Origin: Salpingoeca rosetta
Taxonomy: Eukaryota; Protista; Choanoflagellata
Direction: 5' to 3'
Length of the DNA: 64,000 bases
Assembly (NCBI GenBank): GCA_033442325.1
Contig: JAWQFM010000016.1
Span: 378,097 to 442,096 of the forward strand
The first letter of the stretch is position 1. Each line of letters begins with the position of its first letter. Below the pieces are notes generated by a model. The model was not told the origin of the DNA. It saw only the letters and a program-made list of their open reading frames with translations, and searched no databases. The position numbers and the translations under genes are program-made. Below are positions 32,494 to 61,200 of the stretch, piece after piece.

Positions 32494-35183
32494 TCATCGA
32501 TCTGTGTCGCTGTGCATGTCGGAGAGGTGGCCTCTAAACGACCCCTGCAGTGATGATGGGAACTGCGGCGGTTCTTCGTACTCTGGTGTTGGCGGGCGCG
32601 TGGATGGGCCGGACCAGTATGCGGGCTCCTCCCACACACCTGCCGCCATAGCCACATCCCCGCTCATGTCCAGGTTACTGTCGTCCAGTGGAATCACATC
32701 TCGTCCTGCACGAGCCTCTGCTTTAACCCGGGGTTGCCTAGCACCGCCATGCGCACCACCACGAGCCCCGTAGTCGTCATCGTCATCATCGCCAACCGCG
32801 CTGCTGTCGCCTGCGATGCTTGCAGGCTCGCTGCGTGACATCCAGGCACGTGGCGTGCGGCCCGTGCGAACACCGCGGTCGTCCTGGGCATCTGCCTCGT
32901 GGCCACGACGAAGACGCCCGCCATGCACGCGCTTCGGGGTCCCTGTTGGTGTCGTCGATGTTGGTGTCGATGGTGCTGTGTTCTTCACGGCCACGCGCGA
33001 CGGCAATGGCATCTCAGCCAGCACGTCGCCTCCGCTGTTGATGCGGCCATCGTACAACGGCACATGGCCCATCCGACTCTCAAGCGTGACATCGGCGCTC
33101 TTCGCGTAGTCACCATCGCCATCGTCGTCATCAATGCTCTCCAGGTCATCTATGGTGTCTGCATCGCCGTCTCCGTAAAAGCTGCTGTCACCGCGCGGGT
33201 CACGATCCGAGCTGGCGCTGCCTCCGCCATACAGCCACGCATCAGAGTACTGGGGCGGTGCCTGGTACGGCGGCACGTCGAACACATCGCTGTCCACACC
33301 ACGCACGGGCAGCGGTAATGGTGGTGGTGTCATGCGGCCATCCCTCTGCCAATCAGAGGCGATTGATGCAGCCCCGGTCATGTGCATGTCAAGCACGCCG
33401 TCCTCAGCGTACAGTGAGCCACCAAACTCGCTCGTGGGCCGCTTGCTCACGTCGCTCATGCTTCCCCAGTACTCGTCTGCGTCGCTCGTGTAGTCGTCGT
33501 CTCCATCCGTCGTCACGTCGTCCACTTCATATGGGGTGTACGCTGGTGGCGGTCGGTATGGTGGTGCCTGCAGACCCTCGCGACTAGCCCCGCCGCCAGC
33601 GAGCCACTCAAACTGCGGGCGCGGGCGCCGGCCTGAGTGGGACAGGCGCTCGTAGATGCGGTCGCGAAGGCTGGCACGCCTGCTGGCTTCGCCCTTGCTC
33701 AGCCCAGCGCCCATGCCGCCCTTCTGCATCGCCACCCTCTCCACGGAGGCGTAGGTTGGCGGCGCAATGTAGGCAGGCAAGTCCGGTGCTGCCGGCACGC
33801 GGGTCAACTCCGACACACGGCGAGACTTCTGCCGCCACAGCCGCAGCACCACCACAAGCGCAAGCACCGTCACCAGCACAAGCACCGTGAGAACAGCTAC
33901 GATGGCCATCTCCGTGGTGGAGAAGCGGTTGACGGCGCTCGGGTTGGAGCCGCCGTCATCGCACCCACACAGGCAGGCGCCAGCAGCATCCCCCACGGTC
34001 ACACTCGAGACGGTCAGAGCCGTCGCATCCGTCACATAGGGCGAGGCCGCCTGCAGCGTGGGCAAGAACGTGCCATCGCTCCTGGCAGCGCCGTCGTGCA
34101 TGAGGCAAGCAACTGTGGCGTGGGTCTCGGTAGGCATGGACACGGCGACATCAACGAATACAGCGGTACCAAGAGATGTTCCTTCCTCAACCGTCACCGC
34201 GGCCATCCCCTGCAGACGTGGCCGTGGTCCTGTGGCTGCTGCGCCTCCTGTGCGTATCGCAGCTGCTGCCTCGACGGGTGTGCCAAAGTCCGTCACGTCG
34301 TACGCGCAGGAATGAGCCGAGTAGAACCCAGCAATGTTGTCAACAGTCACAAGGCCCTGCGCGCTGGCAGCCAACAGCTCTGGTGGAATTGGAAAGTCAA
34401 ATGTCGTTGCCTTGTCCACGTCGCCAGAGACAAGGGCTTGCAGCTGCTGCAGTGGGATGGCACTGAGCAAGTTGAGGCTGGTTGCAGACGCCAGCGCCTG
34501 TGTCACATCTGTGAGGAAGGCTCCGATATCGGCCGCTGTGGCATTTGTGATGGATCCATCAAGGTCGGACAGCGTTACGGTGACAGCCACGGTCGTGTCT
34601 GCGCCATCGGGGTGCACACACGTGCAGACGCGATCAGATGTCACTGTTGGAGACGCCGCCTCGTGCTCAAACACGTCACACTCCGACACGCGCGCACACG
34701 CTGCATCAGAGGTGGGTGTGGGCAATACAGCAATGTACTCTTGCTCGCCGTCAAAGCGACATGTGGTCTGGTTGACGCACACACGGTCGCTTGTTGCAGT
34801 GGGTGCAACGACCTGATACTCTGTCGACAGGTCGCACTCAGTCAACAAAGCACACTCCCGATCAGCAAGCGCAGTGCAGCTGGATGTCTCATACTCCATT
34901 GCAGGGTTGCATGTTCGACATGGGGCACATTCTCGGTCGCTTGTGGAGGATGGCCCAGTCAGCTCATATTGGCTCTCACCGCACACCGTCAATGCTAAGC
35001 ATGTGCCGTTTGCAGTCCTGAATTCGGTGTCGAGGCACTCTGCAGTTGTTGTAGTTGTAGTTGTAGTTGTAGTTGTAGTTGTAGTTGTAGTTGTAGTTGT
35101 AGTTGTAGTTGTAGTTGTAGTTGTAGTTGTAGTTGTAGTTGTTGTAGTTGTAGTTGTAGTTGTAGTTGTAGTTGTAGTTGTAG

Positions 35184-35236
<53 letters not shown>

Positions 35237-35261
35237 ATCGTTGTTGTAGTAGTAGTTGTAG

Positions 35262-35310
<49 letters not shown>

Positions 35311-36200
35311 AGTAGTAGTTGTTGTTGTTGTTGTGGTTGTTGTAGTAGTTGTTGTTGTTGTTGTTGTGGTTGTTGTTGTGGTTGTTGTTGTGGTTGTGGT
35401 TGTGGTTGTGGTCGTCGTCGTTGTCGTGGTTGTGGAAGTTGTAGTCGTCGTCGTTGTCGTGGTTGTGGAAGTTGTAGTCGTGGTGGTAGTTGTAGTCGTT
35501 GAGGTTGAAGTTGTACTTGAGGTTGTACTTGTAGTTGTTGTGGTCATCGTTGTCGTTGTAGTGGTCGTTGTATCACCCGAGGAGGTGGACGTTGTGGATG
35601 TCGTGGTGGTTGTGCTTGTTGTAGTGGTGGTTGTGGAAGTTGTCGACAACCCACTTCCAGTACTTGTGCTTGTTGAGGACGTTGAGCTGGAGGTGCCGCT
35701 TCCTGTTGAACTTGTCGTCGTGGTTGTCGTGGTAGTTGTCGTGGTGGTTGTTGTAGTTTTTGTTGGAGTAATGGGGATGCTTGTGGATGATGATGTAGAT
35801 GAAGATGAAGTGCCACTTCCAGTCGAAGTTGTCGTGGTGGTCGTGGTAATCGTGGTGGTCGTGGCGGTGGTTGTTGTTCCGCTCCCAGTGTCTGTTGTGC
35901 TCGTTGTCGTCGTGGTTGTGCCACTTCCTGTTGATGTTGTGGAAGTTGTCGATGTCGATGTTGTCGTTGTTGTACCACTTCCAGTGCTGCTTGTGCTGCT
36001 CGTTGTAGTTGTCGTCGTCGTTGTGGTTGTGCCACTTCCCGTGGACGTTGTTGTTGTTGTTGTTGTAGTAGTAGTAGTAGTAGTTGTTGTTGTTGTAGTA
36101 GTAGTTGTTGTAGTAGTTGAAGTAGTAGTTGTTGTTGTGCTGATGGTTTCTGTACCACTACTCGATGTTGTTGTTGTAGTTGTTGTTGTTGTTGTTGTAG

Positions 36201-36240
<40 letters not shown>

Positions 36241-37033
36241 GGAAGTTGTTGTTGTAGTAGTAGATGACGACGATGAGGATGACGTTGGTAATGTTGTCCC
36301 GCTTCCAGTTGAAGTCGTTGTGGTAGTTGTTGTCGTGCTGGTTGTGCTTGGTGTTGTAGTTGTTGTGCTGGTCGTTGTTGGCGTTGGGGTTGGTGTGGGT
36401 GATGGCAGGATGGCGGTGCCTGTTGACGAGGATGGCCTTGGGGACACTGTTGGTGCTGAAGGCGGCACGAGCGGAGGCGGGCTTGATGGAACCAATGGAC
36501 TGCTGGGCAACACTGGCGGTGTTGCCGGCTGTGAGGGCGTTGGTAGCGGCGACGGCGACGTTGGTGGCACGAGCGGCGGCGGTGATGTGGGCGTCGTTGG
36601 TGGTGCAGTGGGCGGTCTGGGCAGTGGCGTGGGCACAACAGGCCTCGACACAACCACGCTGGTCGTCGCAGGGACAGCGGTTGCTGTTGTCGATGCGCTG
36701 GGACTTGCAAAAGTGGACGGCCGCAGTAGTGTAGGCGACGCAGACGAAAAGATGGGTACACCTGTGCTGGGAACAGGGGTTTGGCTCGGAACCACGCTGA
36801 CAACCGATGACGGCGTGGGCGAAATGCTTCCACTTGACACGACGGGAACACTGATGCTCTGCGATGGCAGCACACTTGACGGTGCAGTTGCTGAGGACGA
36901 GACGGGCGCGATTGTGGCAGTTGTCACAATTGACGTCTGTGTCGATATGGGCACGCTTGCGCTTGACCGCGGCAGGCTTGAGACAACTGATGACGATGTC
37001 GTGGCAGTTGTGGTTGTGGTTGTGGTTGTGGTT

Positions 37034-37068
<35 letters not shown>

Positions 37069-37367
37069 AGTTGTGGTAGTTGTGGTAGTTGTTGTTGTCG
37101 TCGTCTTTGTTGTGGTGGTGGTAGTTGTGGTAGTGGTGATTGTGGTGGTTGTTGTCGTGTCGCCCGAGAAGCCTGTTGTACTTGTGGTGGTGGTGGTTGT
37201 CGGTGGCGATGTTGATGTTGATCCACTGCCAGAACTCGATGTTGTCGTCGTTGTCGTACCTGTTATTGTCGTGGACGCCGTTGTTGAGTCAAGTCCACTT
37301 CCTGTGGTGGTGGTTGTTGTTGTTGTTGTAGTTGTAGTTGTAGTTGTAGTTGTAGTTGTAGTTGTAG

Positions 37368-37401
<34 letters not shown>

Positions 37402-39640
37402 AGTTGTAGTTGTAGTTGTAGTTGTAGTTGTAGTTGTAGTTGTAGTTGTTGTTGTTGTTGTTGTTGTTGTAGTTGTAGTTGTTGTTGTTGTTGTGGGAAG
37501 GGACGTTGTACTACTCACGTCTCCAGACGAAGACGTCGTGGTCGTGGTCGTTGTCGTTGTGGTTGTCGTTGTCGTGTCTCCACTGCCTGTTGAGGACGTT
37601 GAACCAGCAGTACTTGTGGTTGTCTGCACAGAACTTCCAGAGGAGGTCGTGTCAGCATCTGTCGCTGTGGTTGTCGTAGTCAACGTGGTTGTTGCGGCTG
37701 TGGTGGTTGTGGTTGTTGGTGTTGTTGTAGTCACCACCGGCGATGGGCTTGGCGTTGGCTGAAGTGTGGTAGATGCACTTTGCGTTGCTGTGGGCGTGGG
37801 CGTGTGCGTGGGCGTTGGTGTTGGCGTGACCGTAGCAGCGCTGGTTGGCGGCTGTGGCGATGACAGCGGCGGCGGCGACTGAGGAACGTCGGGGGACGAG
37901 GGCACCGGTGGCGGTGAGGATGACGGCAGCGTGTCCGTGAACAGCGGCGAAGGCGGGCTGAGTGGCGGTGGTGAGATGGGACTGCTGGGCCGAATGGGCA
38001 CGCTGGACGGCGGTGGTGTCACAACAGGCACTGTCGGTGACGGAGAGGGCGATGTAGATTGTGCCAGCGATGACGACACAGTGGCAACCGAAGACGACAC
38101 AAGCGGCACAGCTGTCGTTGTTACCACACCCTCGCTGACAATGCTGCTGCTGATGCTACTGCTGCTGCTGCTGGGAACAGTCGCTGACGAGGGTGGAGGG
38201 ACCAAGGATGAAGTCAACGTCGAAGAAGGTGAAACACTGCTGTCCACGGCTGATGTGGGCACAGGAGACGGCTGAGAAGCCACGGCTGAACGGGTGGAAA
38301 GCACCGAACTACTGCTGGCTCTCAAATCGCTGCTCGAGGGTGCAAGCACAGATGTCGCTGTTGGGAAGGGCGTGCTTTCGATGGGACCAAGCCCGCTGAC
38401 TGCTGAAGATGCGGGTGATGGAGACGGTGTTGGCTGTGCAGAGAACACCGTCGTGAGGATTGGCGCAGAAGAGGAGGATGTCACCGCGATGGAAGCCGAT
38501 GGTAGCTGAGGCGTTGGCGACGGACTCCCACCGGACGCTACCACTGTCCCAATTGCACTTGCCGTTGCTGTGGCTGCTGGTGTTGTTGTTGTCGTGAAAA
38601 GAGAAGACGAAGAAGGAGTAGGCAGCGTCGACGGGGATGGCGAGGGTGAGTTCAGCGCCAAGGATGACGATGGTGCAATTGGAGGAGACACGGAGCTCGG
38701 TGAGGGCACCTGGATCTGTGAGCTGCTGATGGGCAGCACCACAACAGAGGAGGATGGTGGCCCAACAAGTCGACTGGAGGCTGCCGGAATAATCAGGCTT
38801 GAGGACACCACGGGCACAACTGGACCAGTGGAATCCGTGGTGGTCGTAGTTGTTGCTGTTGTTGATGTGGTCGTGGTAGTTGTTGTGGTACTTGTCGTGG
38901 TACTTGTCGTGGTCGTGGTTGTTGTGATTGTCGACACGTCACCAGATGAACTTGAAGTCGTCGTAGTTGTGCTGGTCGTCGTTGTAAGTGGTGACACCGT
39001 GGGGTCACCAATTGCCTGCACTGTGGCTTGAGCGCCATACGCTGACTGAACCCACGCCTCAAACTCAAGAATGAAATCGCGAAGCGCGGTCGCAACTGCG
39101 TCTGCCTTTGGTGCATCCGTAATCACTTGGATCACAAGCACCACCCCATCGCCACCAACAGCCTCTCGCCTCGATCGCACTTGCTCATCAAGCCGCAGCA
39201 CAACATCCTCCTCAACCACAAGCGGCGCCAGCAGCTCCACAATCGCACCACGCACCTCTTCTGCATCAATCGCACTCACGTTCACATTGCTGATCACCAG
39301 CGTGTGCGACACAAGCACGCGTGTCACCACCACAGGAAACGACGATGTGCTTGTTGATGTCGGCGCCAGTGTCACCTTGCCCCCACCACTGCTTGTGCTT
39401 GTGCTTGTGGTGGTAGTTGTTGTGGTGCTTGTGATAGTGCTTGTGCTTGTCGTGGTAGTTGTTGTGGTGCTTGTGCTTGTGATAGTGGTTGTCGTGGTTG
39501 TCGTGGTGGAAGACGACCCACTTCCTGTGTCTGTTGTTGTCGAGGTTGTGGACGTGGTGGCGGTTGTAGTGGACGTACCGCTTCCAGTTGATGATGATGT
39601 TGTTGTAGTTGTTGTGGGAAAGACTCCACTTTCCGTCGTT

Positions 39641-39705
<65 letters not shown>

Positions 39706-42665
39706 TGTCGCTGTCGCCGTGGTTGCAGTTGTGGTGCTGGTGGTGGTTGTTGTGGTAGTGGTAGTGGTCGTCGTGGTGCCACTTCCGGTATTGGTTGTTG
39801 TGGTGGGGGTGGTCGTTGTCGTTGTGCTGATTGTCGCGCTGGTCGTGGCTGTTGTGGTTGTTGGCGTGCTGGTCATGGTTGTTGTGGTGGCCGATTTCGT
39901 CATCGTGGATGTCGCACCGCTTTCACCGCCGGTTGTGCTGCTTGTTGTGGCTGTCGTGGCTGTTGTGGTCGTGGTCGTGGGTGTTGTGGTTGTCAATGAG
40001 ATGGTTGAGCTGGAGGTTGTGGTCGTGTCGCCGCTTCCATTCTCCGTGGTCGTGAACCCCGTTGTCGTTGAACTTCCTGTTGATACCGTGGAGGTTGTGC
40101 TTGTGATCGTGCCACTACCACTGCTGCTTGTGCTTGTCATTGTCGGCGTGGGTGTTGTGCTTGTGGTTGTGGTGCTTCCGCTGCCACCACCTGTCGTGGA
40201 GGTTGTCATGGAGGCTGTCGTGGAGGCTGTCGTGGAGGCTGTCGTGGAGGCTGTCGTGGAGGCTGTCGTGGAGGCTGTCGTGGAGGTTGTCATGGAGGTT
40301 GTCATGGAGGCTGTCGTGGAGGCTGTCGTGGAGGTTGGCGTGGAGGTTGGCGTGGAGGTTGGCGTGGAGGTTGGCGTGGAGGTTGGCGTGGAGGTTGGCG
40401 TGGAGGTTGGCGTGGAGGTTATCGGCAGCGACGTGGTCGTGTCGCCACTTTCATTTCCTGCAGTTGTCGAAGTTGTCGAAGTTGTCGTGTCACCACTGGC
40501 AGTCATTGACGTGGTCGTGATTGGAAGTGTGGTAGTGGTGGTGGACACAGTTGTAGGATCTGCTGTGGAAGACGTCGTACTGGTGCTGTCAGCGCCTGTG
40601 GTGGTTGTTGTGGTCGTTGTGGTCGTTGTTGTTGCTGTTGTTGTGAAAGGGTTTGGTGTCGGCGATTGCTGTGGTGTGACTGGCGCTACAGAGGTGACAG
40701 GTGCAATGATGGCTGTGGACTGCGGCGGGTTGATCAGGATGCTGCTCGCTGTTGGCTGCACGACCGAACTCGACACCACAATCACCTGCGGTGGTGGCGT
40801 TGGCAACACGCTTGACACCGACACACTGCTGCTGATGATGCTGCCCGTGGTGGCCAACGTGCCGCTGCTGCTTGCCACCGAGGGCTGGACAGCGGCTGAT
40901 GACACAATGCTGTCGGGCACAACCAATGTTGCAGATGGAGACGGGAGTGCTGATTGCACCGAAGACACGGATGGTGACGGTGATGATGATGATGGTGGTG
41001 CATGCGACACGGCAGGGGTTGGAAGAGATACCGTCGTTGTGCGACCTGCCGATGTCGCTGTCGGAGACACGCTGCCGCCACCAATGTTGCTGCTTGAGGT
41101 TGTAGTTTGCGAGGACAGCAGGGATGGAGAGGGCAGCAGCGCGGATGCGGCAGCTGTTGAAGCAGGTGCGCGCGTCATCGAAGGTGTTGACAGCGTGGTC
41201 AGTGCGAGGGATGTGCTCGCTTCAACCGAACCGTCGTCTGCCGTGGCTGATGGCGGCAGGGTTGCTGCAGATGATGATGGCGGTGAGAGGGATGGCAGCT
41301 GCGTTGGCAGCGGCGAGGCAGACTGTGCCGCTGTTGCTGCAGGTGTGGCGCTGGCGCGTGCTGGCAAGCTGCTTGAAGCCGATGACGTGGTGGGCAGCGA
41401 TGCTGTTGTCTGTGACACCTGATGCATGATCGAGCTCCTTGGAGGCACCACGACCACCGACGACACCGGCACCAACACCGAAGACCGCACTGGTGCAATC
41501 ATCTAAGCGTGACAGCAAACCACAATACAGTATGGCGAGAGAGAGTGTGTGTGTGCAGCAGCGGCAGTTGAAGCGTGAGCTCTCATGTGAAAGGTGTAAT
41601 TTGTGCGCGCATACTGCCGTGCGCAGATATCGATGCATGGTGGCTTGTCACTCAACACGTCAACAACACAACCTGATTAACACGACATGCACACTGTCGA
41701 CTGGCATGTGCTCGGGACACATACACTCACACAAACACACACGCGCGCGCGCGCCCGCGCACACACACCCACTCACTCACTCACCCACACAACCACACAC
41801 ACACTCACTCACTCACTCACTCACCCACACAACCACACACACACTCATTCACACAAGCATGCGCACTGTGTGTCGGACCTGTGTCGATGAAGGTGCCAGT
41901 GCTGGTGTTGAAGAGACGGGTGCAGGCACAAGCAAGCTCGGCTGTATGACAGTGGACGTGCCGGTTGTTGGCTGCTGACTCATGATGGCCGAAGTCGTGA
42001 ACGCTGGTGATGGCGTTGGAGCAGCTGCTGCTGTCGCTGGCGTCGAGGCCACCAACACTGTTGAAGTGGGGCCTGCGGGCTTGCGTGTTGGTGAGGCTGG
42101 TGGTCTCGGCAGTGTTCTGTTGAAGACGGGCGGCGGCGTTGTTGGAAACAGCGCGAGAAGGTGGTCGACGGTGACGTTGCCCGATGCATCACGCCTTCCT
42201 ATTCTCCTTTCTGCGCCTGCTGCAAGCACCAAAGCATGAAGGTGAAATCAGTGCTGCGCATGTGCGGTCCACGCACAAGCTGTGTTGGCACATACAAGCG
42301 CACATACAGGCACACTGGCAAGCGTACACAGAAACACATGCTTCCGTCTTCGTGCAGAGGAAACAAACGACACACGCACAGGGTTGCACAAACAAGAAAC
42401 GACACACACGCCATCCTCAACGCACGATTGCGCGAGCTGGGCTGCCCCAGACCGTACCGTGGCTGTGACCCCGGTTGGTGCTCAGGGCAGGATTGTTGTG
42501 GTGTGGCGCAACGGTGGTTGCTGTGGGTGCGGTTGGTGCCACTGCGGAGGCCGTTGTGACCTCTGAGTTGGAGGTAACTGTGACACACACCACCACAAGG
42601 GCAAACGCAAAGAGGCGCAGCAGCGCCAGCACCCCAGAGCGCACAGGGGCTCGTCGCTCTGCCAT
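32494..42665 (-). CDS. ~3,180-aa mucin/proteoglycan-like type I membrane protein; exons 42665-42458, 42216-41879, 41502-32494
   Basis: Signal peptide MAERRAPVRSGVLALLRLFAFALVVVCVTVTS; phase-compatible GT..AG introns; Thr/Ser/Pro-rich ectodomain; SEA-like module ~38990-39325; Cys repeats ~34617-35037; single TM 33844-33909 followed by RLWRQKSRR; ~450-aa cytoplasmic tail. Confidence 0.85.
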
Positions 42666-43154
42666 GTTGGTGCCGCCGCAGCTGCTGATCTGGTTCAACG
42701 GGCGTCTCAGCATGCCACGACCATGGCAAGGCGAAGACAACCGCAACTCAAGAGTGCGTTGACAAGCGCGTGCGCCGTTCTTGAGTGGGGCTGTGTGGCG
42801 CAGTATTGTGCTAGGCAGGATATGACTTGGGAGAGAGAACACGGCAAGCAAACACGACCCAAACGAGGACGGGACCAGCTGCTCAAAGTAAAGGCAGGTG
42901 GGTCTGCTCTGTTGTGTGCTGTTGTGTGCTGTTGTGTGCTGTTGTGTGCTGTTGTGGTGTTGATGGTGGCTACTGGTTGGTTGATTGGGGGTGAAGGTGA
43001 AACAATAAGGGGAAGAAGGAATGTACGCTGCGGGTGTTGTGCGGAAAAGTTGCTGGTGTCTTCACAAAACCAACTTTTTTTTTATTTTCCTGATTCGGGG
43101 GTGGTGTGCAATTGGCAAACCAGGCTCAAGCGGTGCAAATTGCAACGAGTGCCG

Positions 43155-55257: not shown

Positions 55258-58200
55258 CTACAACTACAACAACAACGAACCTGTGTCCATGTCAATCTCG
55301 TAGCCAAGCAACTTCGGTGCAATGGCGTCTGGAGTAAAGCCATCCATGGGTTTGGCATCCTCTGAAGAAACTTCAACAACGTCGTTACCAGCCATGTCGC
55401 TAAACGCCCAGAACGGGAACGACACAAACACGCGCGTGACATTGAGGCCGATGCCCTTCAGCTTCATGGCATTTGCATCCGCAACAGAAATGGCAATCGT
55501 CACGACCTCAAGTCGCGTGTTGGGCCACGACAACAAGCTCGTGTGCAGTCGCTGAGATGCCGTCGCGGCCGTGGCGTTGTTAGAGGCCTGCAGTGACACA
55601 AACCATGCCTTGGTGTCGGTGGCATTCATCGTCTCTGAGAACGTCAGCGACAACAGCGGCTGCGTCAGGTTCATGTTCAGGGTCACGCTGAGCAGGCGAG
55701 GGCGCACAGCGTCGCCCACAAATGCTGACGCCTGCACAGCGCTGGTCCTGGGGATGCTCTCCAAACTGTTGACCGCAGCATCAACCACAAACCCAGCGTT
55801 TGCAAAGACATACGTTGTTTCGACACTCGTAAACAGGGACGTGTCGTCCTTCAAGAGGTTCAGCAGAGTGTTGTTGAGAGCAATGGTAAAGTTGAGGTCA
55901 ACGGCGTTTGCGGGAGAAGCAACAACGGCAGCAGTCCAGCCGCTGAGCATAATCACTGCCCCACCACCGTCAGCACGCGAGGTGAGAGAAAGGCCATCAA
56001 GCAAAACCAGCGACGGCACGACAGGCTCGTCAAACGAGAAGCGAAGCGTGCCAGAGGACATGTCAACGTCGAAGCCGAGGAGTTGGGGTGGTGTTGCATC
56101 CGCGGTGAAGTTGGCCGCAAAGATGGCGTCTAATGGCGGGTTGGAAACAATGGCATTGCCAGCCATGTCCTCGATAAAACCAGACGACAAAGACAGCCCG
56201 CTCGTTGCTTTGGAAGAAAACAGGAGCGGACGCAGTTTCAGTGCCGTCAGATCCTCATAATCAAGTGTCCAGTTCAGCACAAGCCCATTCGTGGTGGACA
56301 GCGTGCCCTCTCGAGTTGTGTTGTGACTCGCGTGCTGTGACCAGAACAACACGTTGTCAATTGGACGGCTCGTGTTGGCGCGCACGGGCTCCGTGAAGGT
56401 GATGCTGAGGGAGCCGGCGTCCATGTCCACCACAAACGACTCAACCGCCGGCGGCACCGCATCCCCAACAAACGACCGCACCCCAAGCGCTGCGTCCCCG
56501 CTCGTCGCCTCGCTCCCAACACCAAACACATCAGCAACAAGCGTCCCGTCGTGCCACACAAACGCCGTCTCCGCACTCGTCACAAGCGGCTCAAGCACCT
56601 TCATCGCATCCACGTCCGCCTTGGTCAGCGCAACATACACCCGCTCCTGGTCCTCGCTCCAGCTCACATCCCCTCCAACAAGCCGCCGCTCCGCAACAAT
56701 GCCACTCCCGCCACCAACGGCCCCTGCTGACTCCGCTGCCGACGCCGCTGCGCTCGCGTTCCCGTACGCCTGCAACACAAGCGCCGTCACATCCACCGTG
56801 CTCACATTCACGGCCTCGCTAAACTCAAGCCCAAGCACCTCAGACGTCATGTTCAGCGTCGCGTTCACCACAACCGGCGCCCGCGTGTCCGCTACATACG
56901 CTGCCACCTGCAGCGCTCGGTCCCCGGGCACCCCAATCACGTCGTTGCCTCGAATGTCGTCAAGCATCGCCGCCCCAACGCTCACATAGCTGTTCCCGCG
57001 ACGCCGCCCAACCCCGCCAACAAGCGCAAGCCCCAACACGTCCGCCGCCGCGAGATCAATCACCACCTCAAACCCAACATCGCTCTCCGTGCCGCTCCCG
57101 CCATCCTCAAGCAGCGTGTACCCAACAACGCCCCCAACACCAACCACCCCGCGCCCGCTCTGCACCGTCACATGCTCAACCTTCAGCGTCCCAGGATCAA
57201 CAACGTCGTCAAACGACAGCACAAGCTGCCGCGCCTGCATGTCAAGCACGCACTGCACCACGTTCGTCCGCTCAAGGTCCGCTGCGTGTGCCCGCGCCGC
57301 CTGCGCATCCTCCCGCCCAATCCCAAACACTGCGTTCCCCGCCATGTCCGCCACAAGCTCAGGCCCAAACCACATGAAGCTCGTCCCCGCATCCGCTGCA
57401 AGCCCCGCCTGCCGCTTGATCGCCGTCTCGTCGTCCTCGCTCAGCGACACCACAACCCAGCTCTGCCCAACCTCAACACCGCTCGCGGCCGCAACATCGC
57501 TTGCGCTGCCAACGCTGCTCACGTCGTTGCCGCCCCCGCGCACGCTGCTCCCCTCGCTCAGCCGGTGCATCTCAACCGTCGTACCAGCACCAGCACCAGC
57601 AGCACTCGCGTTCCGCACGCTCTGCAGCACAACCGCGCCAACATCAAACGTGCTCACGTTCACGGGCTCGTTGAACAGCAGCCGGATCTCAGCCGCCTCA
57701 AGGTCAACATCAAACGCTGCAAGCCGCGGCCCAACAACGTCCCCAATGTAACCCCGCGCACCAAGAGCGCCCGTCCGCTCAATCCCAACAACCCCGTTCG
57801 CCTCAAACGCCGTGTCCACAATCGCGCCAGCGCCCACGCTCAGGTACGTCGTGCCCGCGCTGGAGCCAACACGCCGCGCCTTGATCGCACGCATGTCCTC
57901 CCCGCTCACGTCAACCACAACCACAAGCACGCCCTCTGCCGTGCTGGACGGCGCGCTGCTCTCCGTCAGGCAGTACACCTGCTGCGCCGTGGTCTCGTTT
58001 GCCGTGGGCTGCAGGCACACCTGCGTGGTGTCGAGCGACGCCGGGTCCACAATCTCGCTGAAGGAGAGGATGAGCGACGCCGCGCTGACGTCCAGCACAA
58101 ACGACTCCAGCACCGGCGCAACCTCGTCACGCAGCAGCTGCTGCACGACAAAGCCTGGGAAGGACAGCCCTGTTCCCACAACCGGGTTGTCGTTCATGTC

Positions 58201-61200
58201 AAGGATGGCACCGTCGCCAAAGTAGATATAACAGTCTCGCTTGACAACACACACCAGCGTGTCCTGCTTCAACAGGTTGAGACTGATGGGCTCCAGCTGC
58301 ACAGCGATGAGCTGCGACGGCTGCGTCGACACAACACTGCCCTGCAGGTAGTCCACAGACGAGTAGCCGAGCTCCAGTGGCCCGCGCTCGTACGAGGACT
58401 GCAGTGACAGCGCCGACACGTTGAGCGAGCTGGCGTTGACTGTTTCATCGAAATACAGCACGAGCACACCCGTGTCCAAATCAATGGACTGGAAACCATC
58501 TGTTGGCAGACGGGGACGAATCACGTCCTCAAAGTACACGTCCACCACCTCTACCGCCTCTGGGACAACAAGACCCTCGGGGTCAGCAACAAAGCCCTCC
58601 TCCAAGTGCGCGACACAGTCGTCGCTTGCCGTGCACACGGGCACAGCCTTGAGCAAGTTGAGGTCCTGGGCCGACAGAATCACCGCCAGCGTGACCAAGT
58701 CGACGTCAATCACATGTGACGTGCTGGAGACGCGAAAGTCGACGGCGCCAGGCACGTTGCTGTCTGCCACGCTCGCGAGGAACCGAAGGTAAGTGATGTT
58801 TACTGCATTCACGTCCACAGGCTCCGAGAAGGCGAGCGTGATCACGCCCGTGGTCACGTTCACCTCGGAGAACACCAGCATCGGCGGCTGAGAGTCGGCA
58901 ATGAACGAGCGGGGGAATTCCGCAGCGGACAGTGGCACGGGAACAACCGGATTGCCGGCCATATCACGCACAAGCGATGGCCCAAAGCTGAGGGCCGTGC
59001 TGTTTCGCTGCGACGCCAAGGTGGTCGTTGCACGCAGGTACTCCGAATCTTCCACAGACAAGTACACCGTCACAAAAGAGTCGTTGACTTGAGACACATA
59101 TCCTCCAGTCAGCGTGTACACCTCCGAGGGACTGGCAGGGTTGTTGCTCAAGACGATGGATCGCACGTCAAACGTGGACACGTCAACGTTCTCGGAGAAT
59201 TGCATGTGCATGGTGGCATTCACCATGTTCACGTCGTACACCTCCAGCTGGGGCGCAATGGCGTCGCGCGTGTATTGGTTCACGGGAAGGGCCAGCGTCG
59301 TGTCAATGGCAAAGACCATGTTGGTGGCCGTGTCATCCGTCACGCCATCTTCCGTCACCAGATATGTGGTTCTGTTGGTGGTGGCCAGGTCAAACGCAAG
59401 CTCAAGCTCGCTCACATCCGCAGAGGACAACTTGGCCACGATTGTGGAAGGAAATCCTGCGCTAAGCAGCTGCCAGGACTCCAGCGCGGGTGCGCCAAGC
59501 CGCAGGGTGGATGTGGGCGAAGTGCGTGTGTTCTGCAGCGAAATCTTGGACAGGTTGAACGCTGCCGCCGACACGTTCTCGTCAAAGCTCAACGTTATCT
59601 CGTGCGAGGTCATGTTCAGGTCAAATGCCACGAGCCGTGGGCGCACCAGGTCCACGCGATACACGCGCGGAGCAGCGTCAGCGGACACAGCAATGGGCAC
59701 CATGGCGTTACCGGCCATGTCACGTGCAAACGTGCTCGTGCACGAGAGCACGGATGCCGTCTTGCTCTGCATCAGCGCTGGCACGGCCTTGATGGCCAGG
59801 CGGTCCGCGTCCGTGAGGTTGAACATGGCGCGGCGCGCGTCGATGCGCACCACGGGTGTACGGTCAGCCAGCGTCACGTTGAAGCGGCCTGTGTGGTCCC
59901 TGTTGAAGGTGAGCTGGGTGGCGTCGATGGAGGACGCGTTGATGGCCTCGTTGAACTCCAGCGTGACCGTGATGGGCAAAAGAAGACCATGCGCTCCCTC
60001 CGTCATTGTCAGGTCAAACGCCACCAACTCCGGTGGTGTGCGATCTGCCTCGTAGACACCGCCTGCACTCGCGGTGAGCGCAACAGCCTCGGCAGGCACG
60101 ACGGCGTTGCCCGCCATGTCAACCACGGTGTCGCTGGCAAAGGAGAGGAAGGTGGAGGCGGCGTCCACCGCGAGAGACGTGGCCATCTGCATGCGGTCCA
60201 GGTTCTCTCGCGTCAGGGTGAGGGTGAGCTCCGCAGGGTCGTTCATGATGCGGGTGGCGTCGAGTAGGCTGGGAACACCAACCACCTCGGCATCCACTCC
60301 GGGCGTGGCCATGGTCGCGTTGGCCGCGGACAGGAACACCAGCTTGCTGGCGTTGAAGGTGTTCACGTCGATGGGCTCCGTGAACGTGAGCGTCACGTTG
60401 CCGCTGTCCATGCTCAGGCTGTAGCCAATCAGTGCCGGGGCCACTGCATCTGGCACCAGCGTGCGCACAGCAACCTGCTCAACCGCAAGCACGCGGTTGC
60501 TCATGTAGTCGGTCACGAGCTGCGGCGTGAGGGACAGACAGGTCGTGTTGGCCAGTAGGCCAAGCGGCCGCCGCCACGCAAGCTCGTTGAAGTCAGACTC
60601 GTGCAAGTGCACGCGCAGCCCAAGCACGCCAAGCTCTTCAAGGGCTGGTAGAAACTCCAGCGTCCAGCTCGAGGTGACATTGGCGGTGACAATGACTGGC
60701 ATCATCGCGCCATTGACACCCGTGCCATTCCGCATCACCATCGTGTCGTTCAGCCATGTCTGATTGTTGTACAGGGAGGTGGCGTTCAGAAGAGTGCCGT
60801 TCACGACCGCGCTAGCGTTGCCAAAGAGTACGCTTGGATCAACGCAGTCCATGCTGACGGTGAGCTGCGTGACGTTGAACGTTGCTGGAACCACGGGCTC
60901 GACAAAGTACAGGTCGAGCGTCCTGTTGCTCATGTCGAGGTCAAAGGCGCTCAGCTGCGGCCGCACGTGGTCCTGCACAAACACCGCTGGAGCGTGGAGG
61001 TCCGCGGCGGTGCGCGGCACAACGGGCTGGCTCGCCATGTCACGCACAAACTGCGAGGTGATGGCAATAAAGGACGTGTTCCCGTTCACCATCAGCCCTG
61101 GGATGCGCATGATGTTGTAGATGTCGGCATGGGAGAGGTAAAACGCAATGCTCGTGTCGTTCACGCTCTCCGTCCTGGCGTCCATCACCGTGTAGGAGCT

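What the first reader, a model, noticed from the sequence alone, without database searches (positions are those of the whole stretch)
32494..42665. Giant mucin-type receptor with dystroglycan-like logic: mucin stalk, SEA-like module, TM, PY tail
Seen: signal peptide, an RRIGRR basic site, over 2,000 aa of Thr/Ser/Pro stalk, a SEA-like alpha/beta module containing RSRR, Cys repeats, a second globular region, one TM and a long Tyr/Pro-motif tail with no catalytic domain. Known: dystroglycan and membrane mucins combine an O-glycosylated stalk, a cleaved SEA module, one TM and a signalling tail; dystroglycan is regarded as animal-specific. Inference: a pre-metazoan glycocalyx-to-cytoskeleton linker, analogous or remotely related to dystroglycan. 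No cadherin-like domains are visible, so orthology is not claimed. This is the best candidate for an undescribed system in the window.
Basis: partly seen in the sequence, partly recalled or inferred. Interest (0 to 1): 0.85.

Follow-up and report, generated by a model that had tools for sequence, protein, structure and literature searches.

The report
Giant choanoflagellate membrane mucin, WW-binding tail
This is a real, spliced and transcribed gene for a 3,185-residue single-pass membrane mucin of a choanoflagellate-type genome; it is not a dystroglycan relative, but its tail carries four conserved paired Pro-x-Tyr motifs of the kind that dock tandem WW-domain proteins such as KIBRA, which makes a surface-coat-to-Hippo link testable.

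Summary
The minus strand carries a 3-exon gene (42665 to 32494), and both introns are removed in transcript contigs. It encodes 3,185 aa (Thr 32%, Ser 16%, Pro 9%). In order, the protein has:
- a signal peptide and an RRIGRR site;
- about 2,100 aa of Thr/Ser/Pro stalk in two blocks;
- a 110-aa alpha/beta module between the blocks;
- four TNFR-type Cys repeats (Pfam TNFR_c6);
- a 236-aa unassigned juxtamembrane domain;
- one TM segment;
- a 445-aa tail with no Pfam domain.

The module folds confidently (pLDDT 82.5) as a ferredoxin-like b-a-b-b-a-b sandwich, and RSRR sits in its disordered b2-b3 loop. This is SEA-like in topology and context only. Pfam SEA does not hit it, there is no GSVVV motif, and SEA structures are not preferred among the fold matches.

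Dystroglycan homology is not supported. DAG1 has no match in the whole genome, and there is no cadherin-like domain.

Only two environmental fragments are relatives. One of them keeps the same four tail motifs (P-x-Y-x-x-[PA]-P-x-[YWF]) in the same order. Three of the four in this protein fit the published consensus for tandem-WW ligands, and the genome encodes a KIBRA-like WW tandem.

Verdict: a new, lineage-restricted variant of the transmembrane-mucin / SEA-like receptor kind. The mechanism is inferred, not shown.

The parts
42458..42665 (-). Exon 1, coding part: start codon at 42665 and signal peptide (42567-42665, MAERRAPVRSGVLALLRLFAFALVVVCVTVTSN). The 5' UTR runs on to at least 42900.
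   Evidence: Translation. Hydrophobic peak at residues 7-18. Transcript contigs cover 42458-42900.
42220..42457 (-). Intron 1 (238 nt, GT..AG).
   Evidence: Joint 42219/42458 in contigs of runs X4 and X5 and in 2 raw RNA reads of X15.
41879..42219 (-). Exon 2: RRIGRR basic site (42191-42208), two N-x-T sites, and the start of the Pro/Ser/Thr/Ala-rich stalk.
41503..41878 (-). Intron 2 (376 nt, GT..AG), containing a GTGAGT-type simple repeat at 41760-41852.
   Evidence: Joint 41502/41879 in contigs of X4 and X5. Tandem repeat.
39346..41502 (-). Stalk block 1 (exon 3 part): Ser/Pro/Val-rich segment, then Thr-rich runs with TSTP and TTAS repeats.
38983..39345 (-). Intra-stalk alpha/beta module (protein residues 903-1023), a ferredoxin-like b-a-b-b-a-b fold. 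One paralogous copy lies in a giant cadherin-repeat protein elsewhere in the genome.
   Evidence: AlphaFold2 pLDDT 82.5, pTM 0.70. Fold searches. Paralogue 42% identical. No Pfam family.
39166..39177 (-). RSRR (residues 959-962) in the disordered b2-b3 loop of the module. It aligns to RARR in the paralogue and is a candidate proprotein-convertase site.
   Evidence: Loop residues 57-63 of the model have pLDDT < 50. R57, R59 and R60 are invariant in alignment A4. It is the only R-x-[KR]-R in the ectodomain. Three convertase P-domain loci in the genome.
35044..38982 (-). Stalk block 2 (about 1,313 aa): alternating Ser/Pro/Val-rich and poly-Thr segments. Pure Thr runs reach 65 residues and are partly encoded by a hexamer simple repeat.
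34618..35043 (-). Four TNFR/NGFR-type Cys-rich repeats (16 Cys). This repeat type is very abundant in the genome.
   Evidence: Pfam TNFR_c6 E 5.9e-10, 39.8 bits against a cut-off of 29.4. More than 130 matches in the own genome.
33910..34617 (-). Family-specific juxtamembrane domain (236 aa) ending in a conserved C-x-C-G-C just outside the membrane. It is possibly a second ferredoxin-like/SEA-like sandwich with a long helical insert.
   Evidence: Conserved in P0001 (41% identical) and P0002. No paralogue. No Pfam or PDB sequence match. Low-confidence model, pLDDT 52.8. Fold matches at Z 6-7.6 include several SEA domains.
33835..33909 (-). Single transmembrane segment (MAIVAVLTVLVLVTVLALVVVLRLW).
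   Evidence: Kyte-Doolittle peak of 3.3, the only one besides the signal peptide. Aligned with the TM segment of P0002.
32497..33834 (-). Cytoplasmic tail of 445 aa (excluding the TM-closing LRLW): Asp/Gly/Ser/Pro/Arg-rich, with 18 Tyr and no recognisable domain.
33751..33780 (-). Tandem PY motif 1, LPAYIAPPTY.
   Evidence: Aligned to LPAYIAAPLY in P0002.
33538..33567 (-). Tandem PY motif 2, APPYRPPPAY.
   Evidence: Aligned to APPYQPPPIW in P0002.
33247..33276 (-). Tandem PY motif 3, VPPYQAPPQY.
   Evidence: In the MAFFT alignment it falls opposite VPSYEQAPSF in P0002. By order along the tail its counterpart would be IPQYEHPPEY.
32560..32589 (-). Degenerate tandem PY motif 4, TPEYEEPPQF.
   Evidence: The fourth motif of P0002 is VPSYEQAPSF.

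Best explanation
The locus encodes an expressed 3,185-aa type I transmembrane mucin. It belongs to a small family restricted to choanoflagellate-type organisms.

Shown:
- the gene model and its splicing;
- the composition and the order of the domains;
- the TNFR-type repeats;
- a confidently predicted ferredoxin-like module inside the stalk, with a conserved R-x-R-R in its flexible b2-b3 loop;
- a conserved, unassigned juxtamembrane domain;
- one TM segment;
- a disordered tail with four conserved paired PY motifs.

Inferred mechanism:
1. The two Thr/Ser/Pro blocks are densely O-glycosylated and form an extended stalk that projects from the cell surface.
2. A kexin/furin-type convertase may cut the module loop, leaving the two halves held together by the shared sheet. 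SEA and SEA-like domains of animal receptors (MUC1, Notch S1, KIAA1549) behave this way. The distal stalk could then be shed under force or regulated.
3. Inside the cell, each PY-xx-PY unit docks a pair of WW domains. The best-fitting reader is the genome's KIBRA-like WW tandem, with Nedd4-type WW-HECT ligases or Yorkie as alternatives.
4. The state of the surface coat would thereby be coupled to Hippo-type signalling and/or to ubiquitin-dependent turnover of the mucin.

It resembles dystroglycan and membrane mucins in logic, but it is not their homologue.
For: Gene and transcript:
- Open frame and exon phases.
- Spliced contigs with both joints at depths 94 and 40, plus raw reads whose first mate lies on the + strand, as expected for a minus-strand RNA in a stranded library.

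Mucin:
- Thr 32%, Ser 16%, Pro 9%; about 2,100 aa of stalk.
- Mixed Thr codons (ACA 436, ACG 188, ACC 161, ACT 133).
- PMT-type O-mannosyltransferase matches at 2 loci.

Module:
- pLDDT 82.5, strands and helices in b-a-b-b-a-b order, loop 57-63 disordered.
- Matches to extracellular ferredoxin-like/SEA-class domains: SorCS2 Z 7.9, PCDH15 MAD12 Z 7.7, CELSR1 Z 6.7, MUC16 SEA Z 6.5.
- The paralogue keeps R-x-R-R and is also flanked by poly-Thr on both sides.
- Convertase P domains at 3 loci.
- Precedents: furin cutting inside SEA-like domains of Notch and KIAA1549 (PMC13570299), and SEA-like domains acting as proteolytic switches (PMC6586460).

Family:
- P0001 (E 2e-32) and P0002 (E 1e-3) share the Cys repeats, the juxtamembrane domain, C-x-C-G-C and the TM segment.
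- Locus L012 shows an S/T-rich stalk upstream in the same frame.

Tail:
- The motif P.Y..[PA]P.[YWF] occurs 4 times in this tail and 4 times in P0002, in the same order.
- None of 100,000 shuffles reached 4 in either tail (means 0.002 and 0.006).
[quoted passage not shown] That consensus binds coupled WW tandems at nM affinity (PMC6744271).

Readers in the genome:
- A WW tandem whose best solved match is KIBRA WW12 (E 2.4e-26), including the inter-domain linker.
- 38 WW matches in all, and three WW-plus-HECT loci.
- Hippo genes are functional in S. rosetta: warts knockout doubles rosette size (bioRxiv 10.1101/2024.07.13.603360).
Against: - No glycosylation, cleavage, localisation or binding data exist.
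- The module's fold is one of the commonest. eIF2-alpha, PheRS, KpsE/Wzz and IS200 transposase domains score as well as SEA-class domains or better.
- Pfam SEA gives no hit.
- R-x-R-R conservation rests on only two sequences.
- The juxtamembrane model is of low confidence.
- The one complex prediction tried (a single Nedd4-like WW domain with PY motif 1) gave no verdict.
- PPxY motifs bind many WW proteins, so the KIBRA-like reader is a choice by fit, not a finding.
- RNA coverage of the main exon beyond its first ~1.1 kb was not examined.
Confidence: 0.6

Rival explanations
1. [quoted passage not shown]
For: - Shared order of parts: mucin stalk, cleavable alpha/beta sandwich, one TM segment, PY tail.
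- Beta-dystroglycan also has a PY-xx-PY pair that binds KIBRA (PMC6744271).
- Sponge dystroglycans have a long Ser/Thr-rich N-terminal half, and POMK, B4GAT1 and LARGE exist in choanoflagellates (PMC4582122).
Against: - Pfam DAG1 has no hit in the gene or in the whole genome.
- No cadherin-like/Ig domain and no Gly-Ser site.
- No dystroglycan chain appears among the top 50 fold matches of either domain.
- An exhaustive HMMER search of the juxtamembrane domain plus tail found no animal protein.
- The PY pairs are internal rather than at the C-terminus.
- Dystroglycan, dystrophin and laminin are reported absent from choanoflagellates (PMC4582122).
Confidence: 0.03
2. A passive glycocalyx or barrier mucin. 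The stalk only coats and protects the cell or mediates adhesion, and the PY motifs serve solely as Nedd4/Rsp5-type ubiquitin-ligase docking sites for endocytosis and turnover, with no signalling.
For: - Three WW-plus-HECT loci in the genome.
- PPxY-dependent down-regulation of membrane proteins is the most widespread use of such motifs in eukaryotes (general knowledge).
- The first motif reads PPTYASV, an extended PPxYxx-hydrophobic form.
Against: - The exact two-residue spacing is conserved in all four units and in both homologues. That points to a coupled WW tandem rather than single WW domains (PMC6744271).
- Turnover would not need four units or a 445-aa tail.
- This reading is compatible with the main explanation rather than exclusive of it.
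Confidence: 0.25
3. A phosphotyrosine scaffold. The 18 tail tyrosines are substrates of the abundant choanoflagellate tyrosine kinases and recruit SH2/PTB proteins. Phosphorylation would switch WW binding off, as happens at the beta-dystroglycan PPxY.
For: - Tyr makes up 4% of the tail and many tyrosines lie in acidic contexts (DDDYTSD, DADEYWG, DGDYAKS).
- The size of the choanoflagellate tyrosine-kinase repertoire is general knowledge and was not tested here.
Against: - Only the PY-embedded tyrosines are seen to be conserved with P0002.
- No kinase or SH2 evidence was gathered here.
Confidence: 0.1
4. Artefact: a low-complexity open frame, a mis-assembly of repeats, or a pseudogene.
For: - Poly-Thr runs are encoded by simple hexamer or trimer repeats.
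- Other frames of the same DNA are also open for hundreds of codons.
Against: - Spliced transcripts exist.
- 3,002 codons without a stop run through non-repetitive domains.
- Pfam-recognised repeats, a confidently folding module and conserved homologues.
Confidence: 0.02

Closest known systems
Animal SEA-type transmembrane mucins (MUC1, MUC13, MUC16, MUC17)
   Same: Signal peptide, very long Pro/Thr/Ser O-glycodomain, an alpha/beta-sandwich module with a cleavage-prone b2-b3 turn, one TM segment and a non-catalytic signalling tail. The MUC16 SEA domain is among the fold matches of both globular parts (Z 6.5 and 6.8).
   Different: - No Pfam SEA match and no G/SVVV autoproteolysis motif; a basic R-x-R-R loop stands in that position.
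- The confident module sits in the middle of the stalk, not next to the membrane.
- TNFR-type Cys repeats and a novel juxtamembrane domain are interposed.
- The tail motifs are different.
- No sequence homology was detected.
KIAA1549 (human O-mannosylated type I membrane protein with SEA-like domains and a furin site)
   Same: Large Ser/Thr-rich O-glycodomain, predicted SEA-like domains that contain a furin site, a TM segment and a long cytosolic domain (PMC13570299). This is the closest analogue for 'convertase site inside an SEA-like sandwich of a mucin-like receptor'.
   Different: No sequence match in the Pfam scans. KIAA1549 has three juxtamembrane SEA-like domains and no TNFR repeats. 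Its tail is not known to carry paired PY motifs.
Dystroglycan (DAG1)
   Same: Mucin-like stalk, an SEA-like maturation domain class, one TM segment, and a tail with two PY motifs two residues apart that bind the KIBRA WW tandem (Kd about 96 nM; PMC6744271).
   Different: - No IG2_MAT_NU region, no cadherin-like domain and no Gly-Ser site.
- No Pfam DAG1 hit in the gene or the genome.
- Four internal PY pairs instead of one C-terminal pair.
- The partners dystrophin and laminin are absent from choanoflagellates (PMC4582122).
Notch heterodimerisation (HD) domain and other SEA-like 'proteolytic switch' receptors (PCDH15 MAD12, IA-2, EpCAM/Trop2)
   Same: Ferredoxin-type sandwich in the ectodomain of a single-pass receptor, in some cases cut by furin and still held together (PMC6586460, PMC13570299). 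PCDH15 MAD12, Trop2 and IA-2 appear among the fold matches.
   Different: Z scores of 6-8 are no higher than for unrelated ferredoxin-like proteins. No neighbouring folded domain shields the module, which is flanked by poly-Thr on both sides.
Fungal signalling mucins and wall-stress sensors (Msb2, Hkr1, Wsc1, Mid2); from general knowledge, not tested here
   Same: Single-pass proteins with a long O-mannosylated Ser/Thr stalk, a short Cys-rich or regulatory region, and a cytoplasmic tail that recruits signalling proteins. Msb2 is activated by proteolytic shedding of its mucin domain.
   Different: No sequence relationship was found. The fungal tails use other partners (Cdc42, Rom2), and no ferredoxin-like module or paired PY motifs are known there.

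Membership tests
Dystroglycan (DAG1) | Sequence match to the dystroglycan C-terminal region (Pfam DAG1, PF05454; the IG2_MAT_NU core of PMC4582122) | tested here: not met
   No hit in Pfam scans of the ectodomain pieces and the tail at E <= 1 to 10. No PF05454 match anywhere in the genome, although that search had no positive control.
Dystroglycan (DAG1) | Cadherin-like/Ig domain next to the maturation domain, and a Gly-Ser alpha/beta cleavage site | tested here: not met
   No Ig or cadherin family in the Pfam scans. The predicted secondary structure of both globular parts is alpha/beta, not all-beta. The loop carries RSRR, not G-S.
Dystroglycan (DAG1) | C-terminal PPxY dystrophin-binding site, with dystrophin and laminin present as partners | tested here: not met
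   PY pairs exist but are internal, and the C-terminus reads ...SDMHSDTDR. Absence of the partners from choanoflagellates is taken from PMC4582122 and was not retested.
SEA domain (Pfam PF01390) / canonical SEA mucins | Match to the SEA profile and a G/SVVV autoproteolysis motif between b2 and b3 | tested here: not met
   No SEA hit for the module, its paralogue or the juxtamembrane domain at E <= 10. The only PF01390 match in the genome lies on another contig. No GSVVV in the sequence.
SEA-like fold class (structure-defined: Notch HD, PCDH15 MAD12, IA-2, EpCAM) | Extracellular b-a-b-b-a-b alpha/beta sandwich in a cell-surface protein | tested here: met
   The module model (pLDDT 82.5) has exactly this order of elements. 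It aligns to SorCS2, PCDH15 MAD12, CELSR1 and the MUC16 SEA domain at Z 6.5-7.9.
SEA-like fold class (structure-defined: Notch HD, PCDH15 MAD12, IA-2, EpCAM) | Closer structural similarity to SEA-class domains than to other ferredoxin-like folds | tested here: inconclusive
   Unrelated ferredoxin-like domains score as high or higher (Z 8.0-8.4). Foldseek finds nothing at E <= 1e-3. For the juxtamembrane domain, 8 of the top 50 matches are SEA-class, but the model has pLDDT 52.8.
Mucin (PTS-domain glycoprotein) | Long Pro/Thr/Ser-rich domain in a secreted or membrane protein | tested here: met
   About 2,100 aa at 50-100% Thr+Ser+Pro, lying behind a signal peptide.
Mucin (PTS-domain glycoprotein) | Dense O-glycosylation of that domain | not testable with these tools
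   Only the capacity can be shown: PMT-family matches at 2 loci, and POMK/LARGE reported in choanoflagellates (PMC4582122).
TNFR/NGFR cysteine-rich repeat proteins | Pfam TNFR_c6 above the gathering score | tested here: met
   39.8 bits against a cut-off of 29.4, in 3 stretches. P0001 scores 45 bits.
Tandem-WW ligands (Phi-Phi-x-Y-x-x-Psi-P-x-Y; PMC6744271) | [quoted passage not shown] | tested here: met
   LPAYIAPPTY, APPYRPPPAY and VPPYQAPPQY fit the consensus, and a fourth unit is degenerate (Phe in place of the last Tyr). Two units in P0002 also fit.
Tandem-WW ligands (Phi-Phi-x-Y-x-x-Psi-P-x-Y; PMC6744271) | Measured binding to a coupled WW tandem | not testable with these tools
The KIBRA-like tandem was found only afterwards.

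The most novel reading that the evidence does not exclude
The mucin is a surface input to the Hippo pathway in a unicellular relative of animals. Its four conserved PY-xx-PY units capture the KIBRA-like WW tandem (or Yorkie) at the plasma membrane. Shedding or tension on the glycosylated stalk, gated by convertase cleavage of the ferredoxin-like module, changes how much of that regulator is sequestered. This would place a glycocalyx-to-KIBRA/Hippo coupling, known in animals for dystroglycan, before the origin of animals, and built from a non-homologous receptor.
Probability: 0.15. Interest if true: 0.8.

Novelty: new variant of a known kind. Interest (0 to 1): 0.5.

Why it matters
Membrane mucins with a cleavable alpha/beta sandwich and a signalling tail are treated as animal (largely vertebrate) inventions, and dystroglycan as animal-specific. 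[quoted passage not shown]

Its tail gives a concrete hypothesis that can be tested genetically. The Hippo pathway controls rosette size in S. rosetta, but its upstream membrane inputs there are unknown. A receptor with four KIBRA-type paired PY motifs is a specific candidate.

The two unassigned domains (the intra-stalk module shared with a giant cadherin-repeat protein, and the juxtamembrane domain) are new families that merit structural work.

If the tail motifs serve only for turnover, the finding is a well-documented but ordinary lineage-specific mucin.

Tried and rejected
- **Homologues of the intra-stalk module.** A word-indexed search within giant proteins and a profile search among short proteins found none. 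The only relative is the paralogue in the same genome.
- **More family members.** A profile search with A2 and two metagenome scans found none beyond P0001 and P0002.
- **Sequence matches to solved structures.** None for the module or the juxtamembrane domain.
- **Relationship between the two globular parts.** hhalign gave probability 0.2, so they are not detectably related.
- **Language-model look-alikes.** Only sub-threshold leads. An SEA cluster scored 0.79 for the module. Nothing useful appeared for the juxtamembrane domain or the tail.
- **Complex prediction.** A single WW domain of the Nedd4-like gene (L018:3026-3202) with PY motif 1 scored 0.12 against a mark of 0.34. This is no verdict and counts neither for nor against binding.
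- **Dystroglycan homology.** Considered and rejected; see the membership test.
- **A catalytic or folded domain in the tail.** Considered and rejected: no family at E <= 1 and low recognition.
- **Ser-Gly sites as glycosaminoglycan attachment.** The idea comes from another note. I only counted 41 SG dipeptides and took it no further.

Full report
**Observation**

The region 32494-42665 holds one gene on the minus strand. A 3,002-codon open frame runs from 41502 to 32494. Upstream of it lie two short exons. The start codon at 42665 opens a typical signal peptide.

Laying public reads and contigs on 41200-42900 gave two joints: 41502/41879 (skips 376 nt) and 42219/42458 (skips 238 nt). Both have GT..AG ends on the gene strand. 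Both appear in one contig each of two runs from one study, at depths 94 and 40. The second joint is also seen in two raw RNA-seq reads. Raw reads over the exons have their first mate on the + strand, as expected for a minus-strand RNA in a stranded library.

Exons 1 and 2 add 549 nt, so the three exons join in frame into a 3,185-aa protein with Thr 32%, Ser 16% and Pro 9%. The genome is 55.4 Mb in 68 contigs. It carries the repeat families and Hippo genes expected of Salpingoeca rosetta. I call it choanoflagellate-type on that basis only.

**Anatomy**

Coordinates were verified. From the N-terminus:
- Signal peptide (42567-42665).
- RRIGRR (42191-42208).
- Stalk block 1, to 39346.
- A 110-aa alpha/beta module (38983-39345), with RSRR at 39166-39177.
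- Stalk block 2 (35044-38982). Pure Thr runs reach 65 residues and are partly encoded by a hexamer simple repeat.
- Four TNFR/NGFR-type Cys repeats (34618-35043; Pfam TNFR_c6, E 5.9e-10, above the curated cut-off).
- A 236-aa juxtamembrane domain (33910-34617) ending in C-x-C-G-C.
- The only internal hydrophobic segment (33835-33909).
- A 445-aa Asp/Gly/Ser/Pro/Arg-rich tail with no Pfam family.

**The alpha/beta module**

A two-sequence alignment gave an AlphaFold2 model with mean pLDDT 82.5 and pTM 0.70. The order of elements is b1-a1-b2-loop-b3-a2-b4. The loop (model residues 57-63, holding RSRR) is the only low-confidence stretch. This is the ferredoxin-like sandwich that SEA and SEA-like domains share, and the b2-b3 turn is where SEA domains are cleaved (PMC6586460).

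The exhaustive structural search placed several domains of animal surface receptors at Z 6.5-7.9: the SorCS2 membrane-proximal domain, protocadherin-15 MAD12, CELSR1 and the MUC16 SEA domain. A designed ferredoxin fold scored highest there at Z 8.0, and unrelated eIF2-alpha, PheRS and IS200 transposase domains fall in the same Z range. In the second-look search the top matches reach Z 8.0-8.4, with the designed fold and eIF2-alpha domains leading. Foldseek gave nothing at E <= 1e-3.

Pfam SEA does not match the module or its paralogue at E <= 10. The one SEA match in the genome lies elsewhere. So 'SEA-like' holds for topology and context, not for family membership.

The module has exactly one relative anywhere I could search. 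This is a copy, 42% identical in the genome search and 36-40% in the MAFFT alignments. It lies in a 7,387-codon open frame on another contig that encodes a giant protein with cadherin repeats, EGF domains and mucin blocks. There too the module is flanked by poly-Thr on both sides, and RARR aligns with RSRR.

R-x-[KR]-R occurs only once in the 2,700-aa ectodomain. The genome has three loci with a proprotein-convertase P domain. Convertase cleavage of the loop, with the halves staying associated, is therefore a reasonable inference with good precedents: Notch S1, and KIAA1549 (PMC13570299). It remains an inference.

**The membrane-proximal part and the family**

The Cys repeats belong to a family with more than 130 matches in this genome. 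The juxtamembrane domain and the tail have no paralogue.

An exhaustive HMMER search of the juxtamembrane domain plus tail against 1.84 billion representative proteins returned two hits only.
- P0001 (E 2e-32, 41% identical) comes from a Tara Oceans scaffold.
- P0002 (E 1e-3) comes from a JGI metagenome contig.
- Both are fragments called on eukaryotic DNA.
- The contig of P0002 is open in the same frame from its first base, through about 480 aa of Ser/Thr-rich stalk, four Cys repeats, the juxtamembrane domain, C-x-C-G-C, a TM segment and a tail.

The architecture is thus conserved in at least three organisms. No animal, filasterean or other named protein was found. Further profile and metagenome searches added nothing.

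The juxtamembrane model is poor (pLDDT 52.8). Its secondary structure again reads b, long helical insert, b-b-a-b. Eight of its top 50 matches at Z 5.9-7.2 are SEA-class domains: Gpr126 SEA, TMPRSS6 SEA, three MUC16 SEA entries, Trop2, IA-2 and SorCS2. I treat a second SEA-like sandwich next to the membrane as possible, not shown. The two globular parts are not detectably related to each other.

**The tail**

The motif P-x-Y-x-x-[PA]-P-x-[YWF] occurs four times: PAYIAPPTY, PPYRPPPAY, PPYQAPPQY and PEYEEPPQF. The expected count in shuffles of the tail is 0.002, and none of 100,000 shuffles reached four. P0002 has four as well, in the same order along the tail, with the same statistics. The first two of these are aligned to ours.

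This is not just 'PPxY'. [quoted passage not shown] Lin et al. (PMC6744271) showed that this arrangement, with consensus Phi-Phi-x-Y-x-x-Psi-P-x-Y, is what tightly coupled WW tandems (KIBRA, MAGI2/3) bind with nM affinity. Single or widely spaced PY motifs bind only at uM affinity. Beta-dystroglycan carries one such pair and binds KIBRA at about 96 nM.

Three of the four units here fit that consensus exactly. [quoted passage not shown]

The genome has 38 WW matches and three loci where WW domains are followed by a HECT domain, i.e. Nedd4-type ligases. It also has a WW tandem at G000:C18:233629-233862 whose best solved match is KIBRA WW12 (E 2.4e-26). The alignment runs through the inter-domain linker that couples the two domains, and a coiled-coil region follows.

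Hippo, Warts and Yorkie exist and function in S. rosetta. Warts knockout doubles the number of cells per rosette and enlarges the ECM core (bioRxiv 10.1101/2024.07.13.603360).

**Most likely working**

- Shown: an expressed type I membrane protein with a very long PTS stalk, folded modules as described, and a disordered tail with conserved paired PY units.
- Inferred from composition and known biology: dense O-glycosylation. PMT-family enzymes are present, and POMK/LARGE are reported in choanoflagellates (PMC4582122).
- Inferred from fold, loop disorder, the conserved basic site and precedent: convertase cleavage of the module loop, giving a non-covalently held, sheddable distal stalk.
- Inferred from motif grammar: recruitment of a WW tandem. 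The KIBRA-like protein is the best fit, with Nedd4-type ligases or Yorkie as alternatives.

The turnover-only and phosphotyrosine readings are compatible rivals.

**Comparison with the known**

The design matches the class of single-pass receptors with an O-glycodomain, an SEA or SEA-like sandwich and a signalling tail: MUC1 and other SEA mucins, KIAA1549, dystroglycan and Notch HD. Membership of any of these families fails on every sequence-defined criterion tested.
- Pfam DAG1 has no match in the gene or the genome.
- There is no cadherin-like domain and no Gly-Ser or GSVVV site.
- No dystroglycan appears among the fold matches.
- The PY pairs are internal rather than C-terminal.

The literature agrees that dystroglycan, dystrophin and laminin are absent from choanoflagellates (PMC4582122). 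Its hint of remote relationship and of a cytoskeletal link is unsupported.

**Novelty and score**

I rate this a new variant of a known kind. It is a lineage-restricted transmembrane mucin family with two unassigned domains and a tandem-PY tail, seemingly undescribed. Papers that mention S. rosetta and mucins discuss gel-forming mucins, rosetteless and glycosyltransferases, not this protein.

Interest is moderate. The architecture by itself is convergent and unsurprising in organisms rich in surface glycoproteins. The conserved KIBRA-type motifs, however, turn 'what feeds the Hippo pathway before animals' into a direct experiment.

**Limits**

- RNA evidence covers only the 5' 1.7 kb that I laid.
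- Module conservation rests on two sequences, and the juxtamembrane domain on three.
- The one complex job gave no verdict.
- Choanoflagellate transcriptomes could not be searched.

Noticed in passing
G000:C18:137993-160153 (minus strand; loci L014-L017, L010): A 7,387-codon open frame encodes a giant surface protein. It has more than 20 cadherin-type repeats, EGF-like and receptor-L-like regions, large unassigned beta-rich regions, several mucin blocks and the only paralogue of the intra-stalk alpha/beta module. 230 bases in it read N (withheld).
   Followed up: partly
G000:C18:233629-233862 (L020:2594-2851, minus strand): A KIBRA-like WW tandem. Its best solved match is KIBRA WW12 (E 2.4e-26) with a conserved inter-WW linker, and a coiled-coil region follows. 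It is a candidate upstream Hippo regulator in this genome.
   Followed up: partly
G000:C32:81742-81951 (L019): A second pair of directly adjacent WW domains, in an 852-codon open frame that is otherwise low-complexity. Its identity was not determined.
   Followed up: no
G000:C7:1991236-1996436, C14:268016-274343, C2:1110603-1114233: Three loci where WW-domain exons are followed by HECT-domain exons on the same strand, i.e. Nedd4-type ubiquitin ligases. The C7 gene is split into many short exons separated by (GT)n-rich introns.
   Followed up: partly
window 42682-42900: Raw RNA reads here have the opposite orientation (first mate on the minus strand) to those over the mucin exons. This suggests a divergent transcript on the + strand starting just upstream of the mucin gene.
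   Followed up: no
window 35048-35572, 36047-36255, 37007-37494, 40192-40424: The poly-Thr and TSTP runs are encoded by simple 3-, 6- and 12-nt tandem repeats (for example GTTGTA x 87 at 83% match). Stalk length is therefore likely to vary between strains through slippage.
   Followed up: no
window 35040-40520 (stalk): The whole protein has 41 Ser-Gly dipeptides, most of them in the stalk within recurring T-G-S-G-T, E-S-G-D or S-S-G-D contexts that punctuate the Thr runs. Another note of this scan reads them as possible glycosaminoglycan sites. I only counted them.
   Followed up: partly
G000:C28:706292-706501: The only match to the canonical Pfam SEA domain in the whole genome (27.9 bits, just over the cut-off), in a 277-codon open frame unrelated to this gene.
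   Followed up: no
L013:129-1370 (Tara Oceans scaffold): The homologue P0001 ends at a stop codon inside its transmembrane segment (…VLGVLVLL*). This is either an intron at that point or a truncated copy. The scaffold is too short to tell.
   Followed up: no
window 55264-63990: Another very long minus-strand open frame (2,908 codons) lies 13 kb upstream in the same window, and other notes of the scan describe it as a repeat-built giant protein. The neighbourhood is rich in large surface or matrix genes.
   Followed up: no
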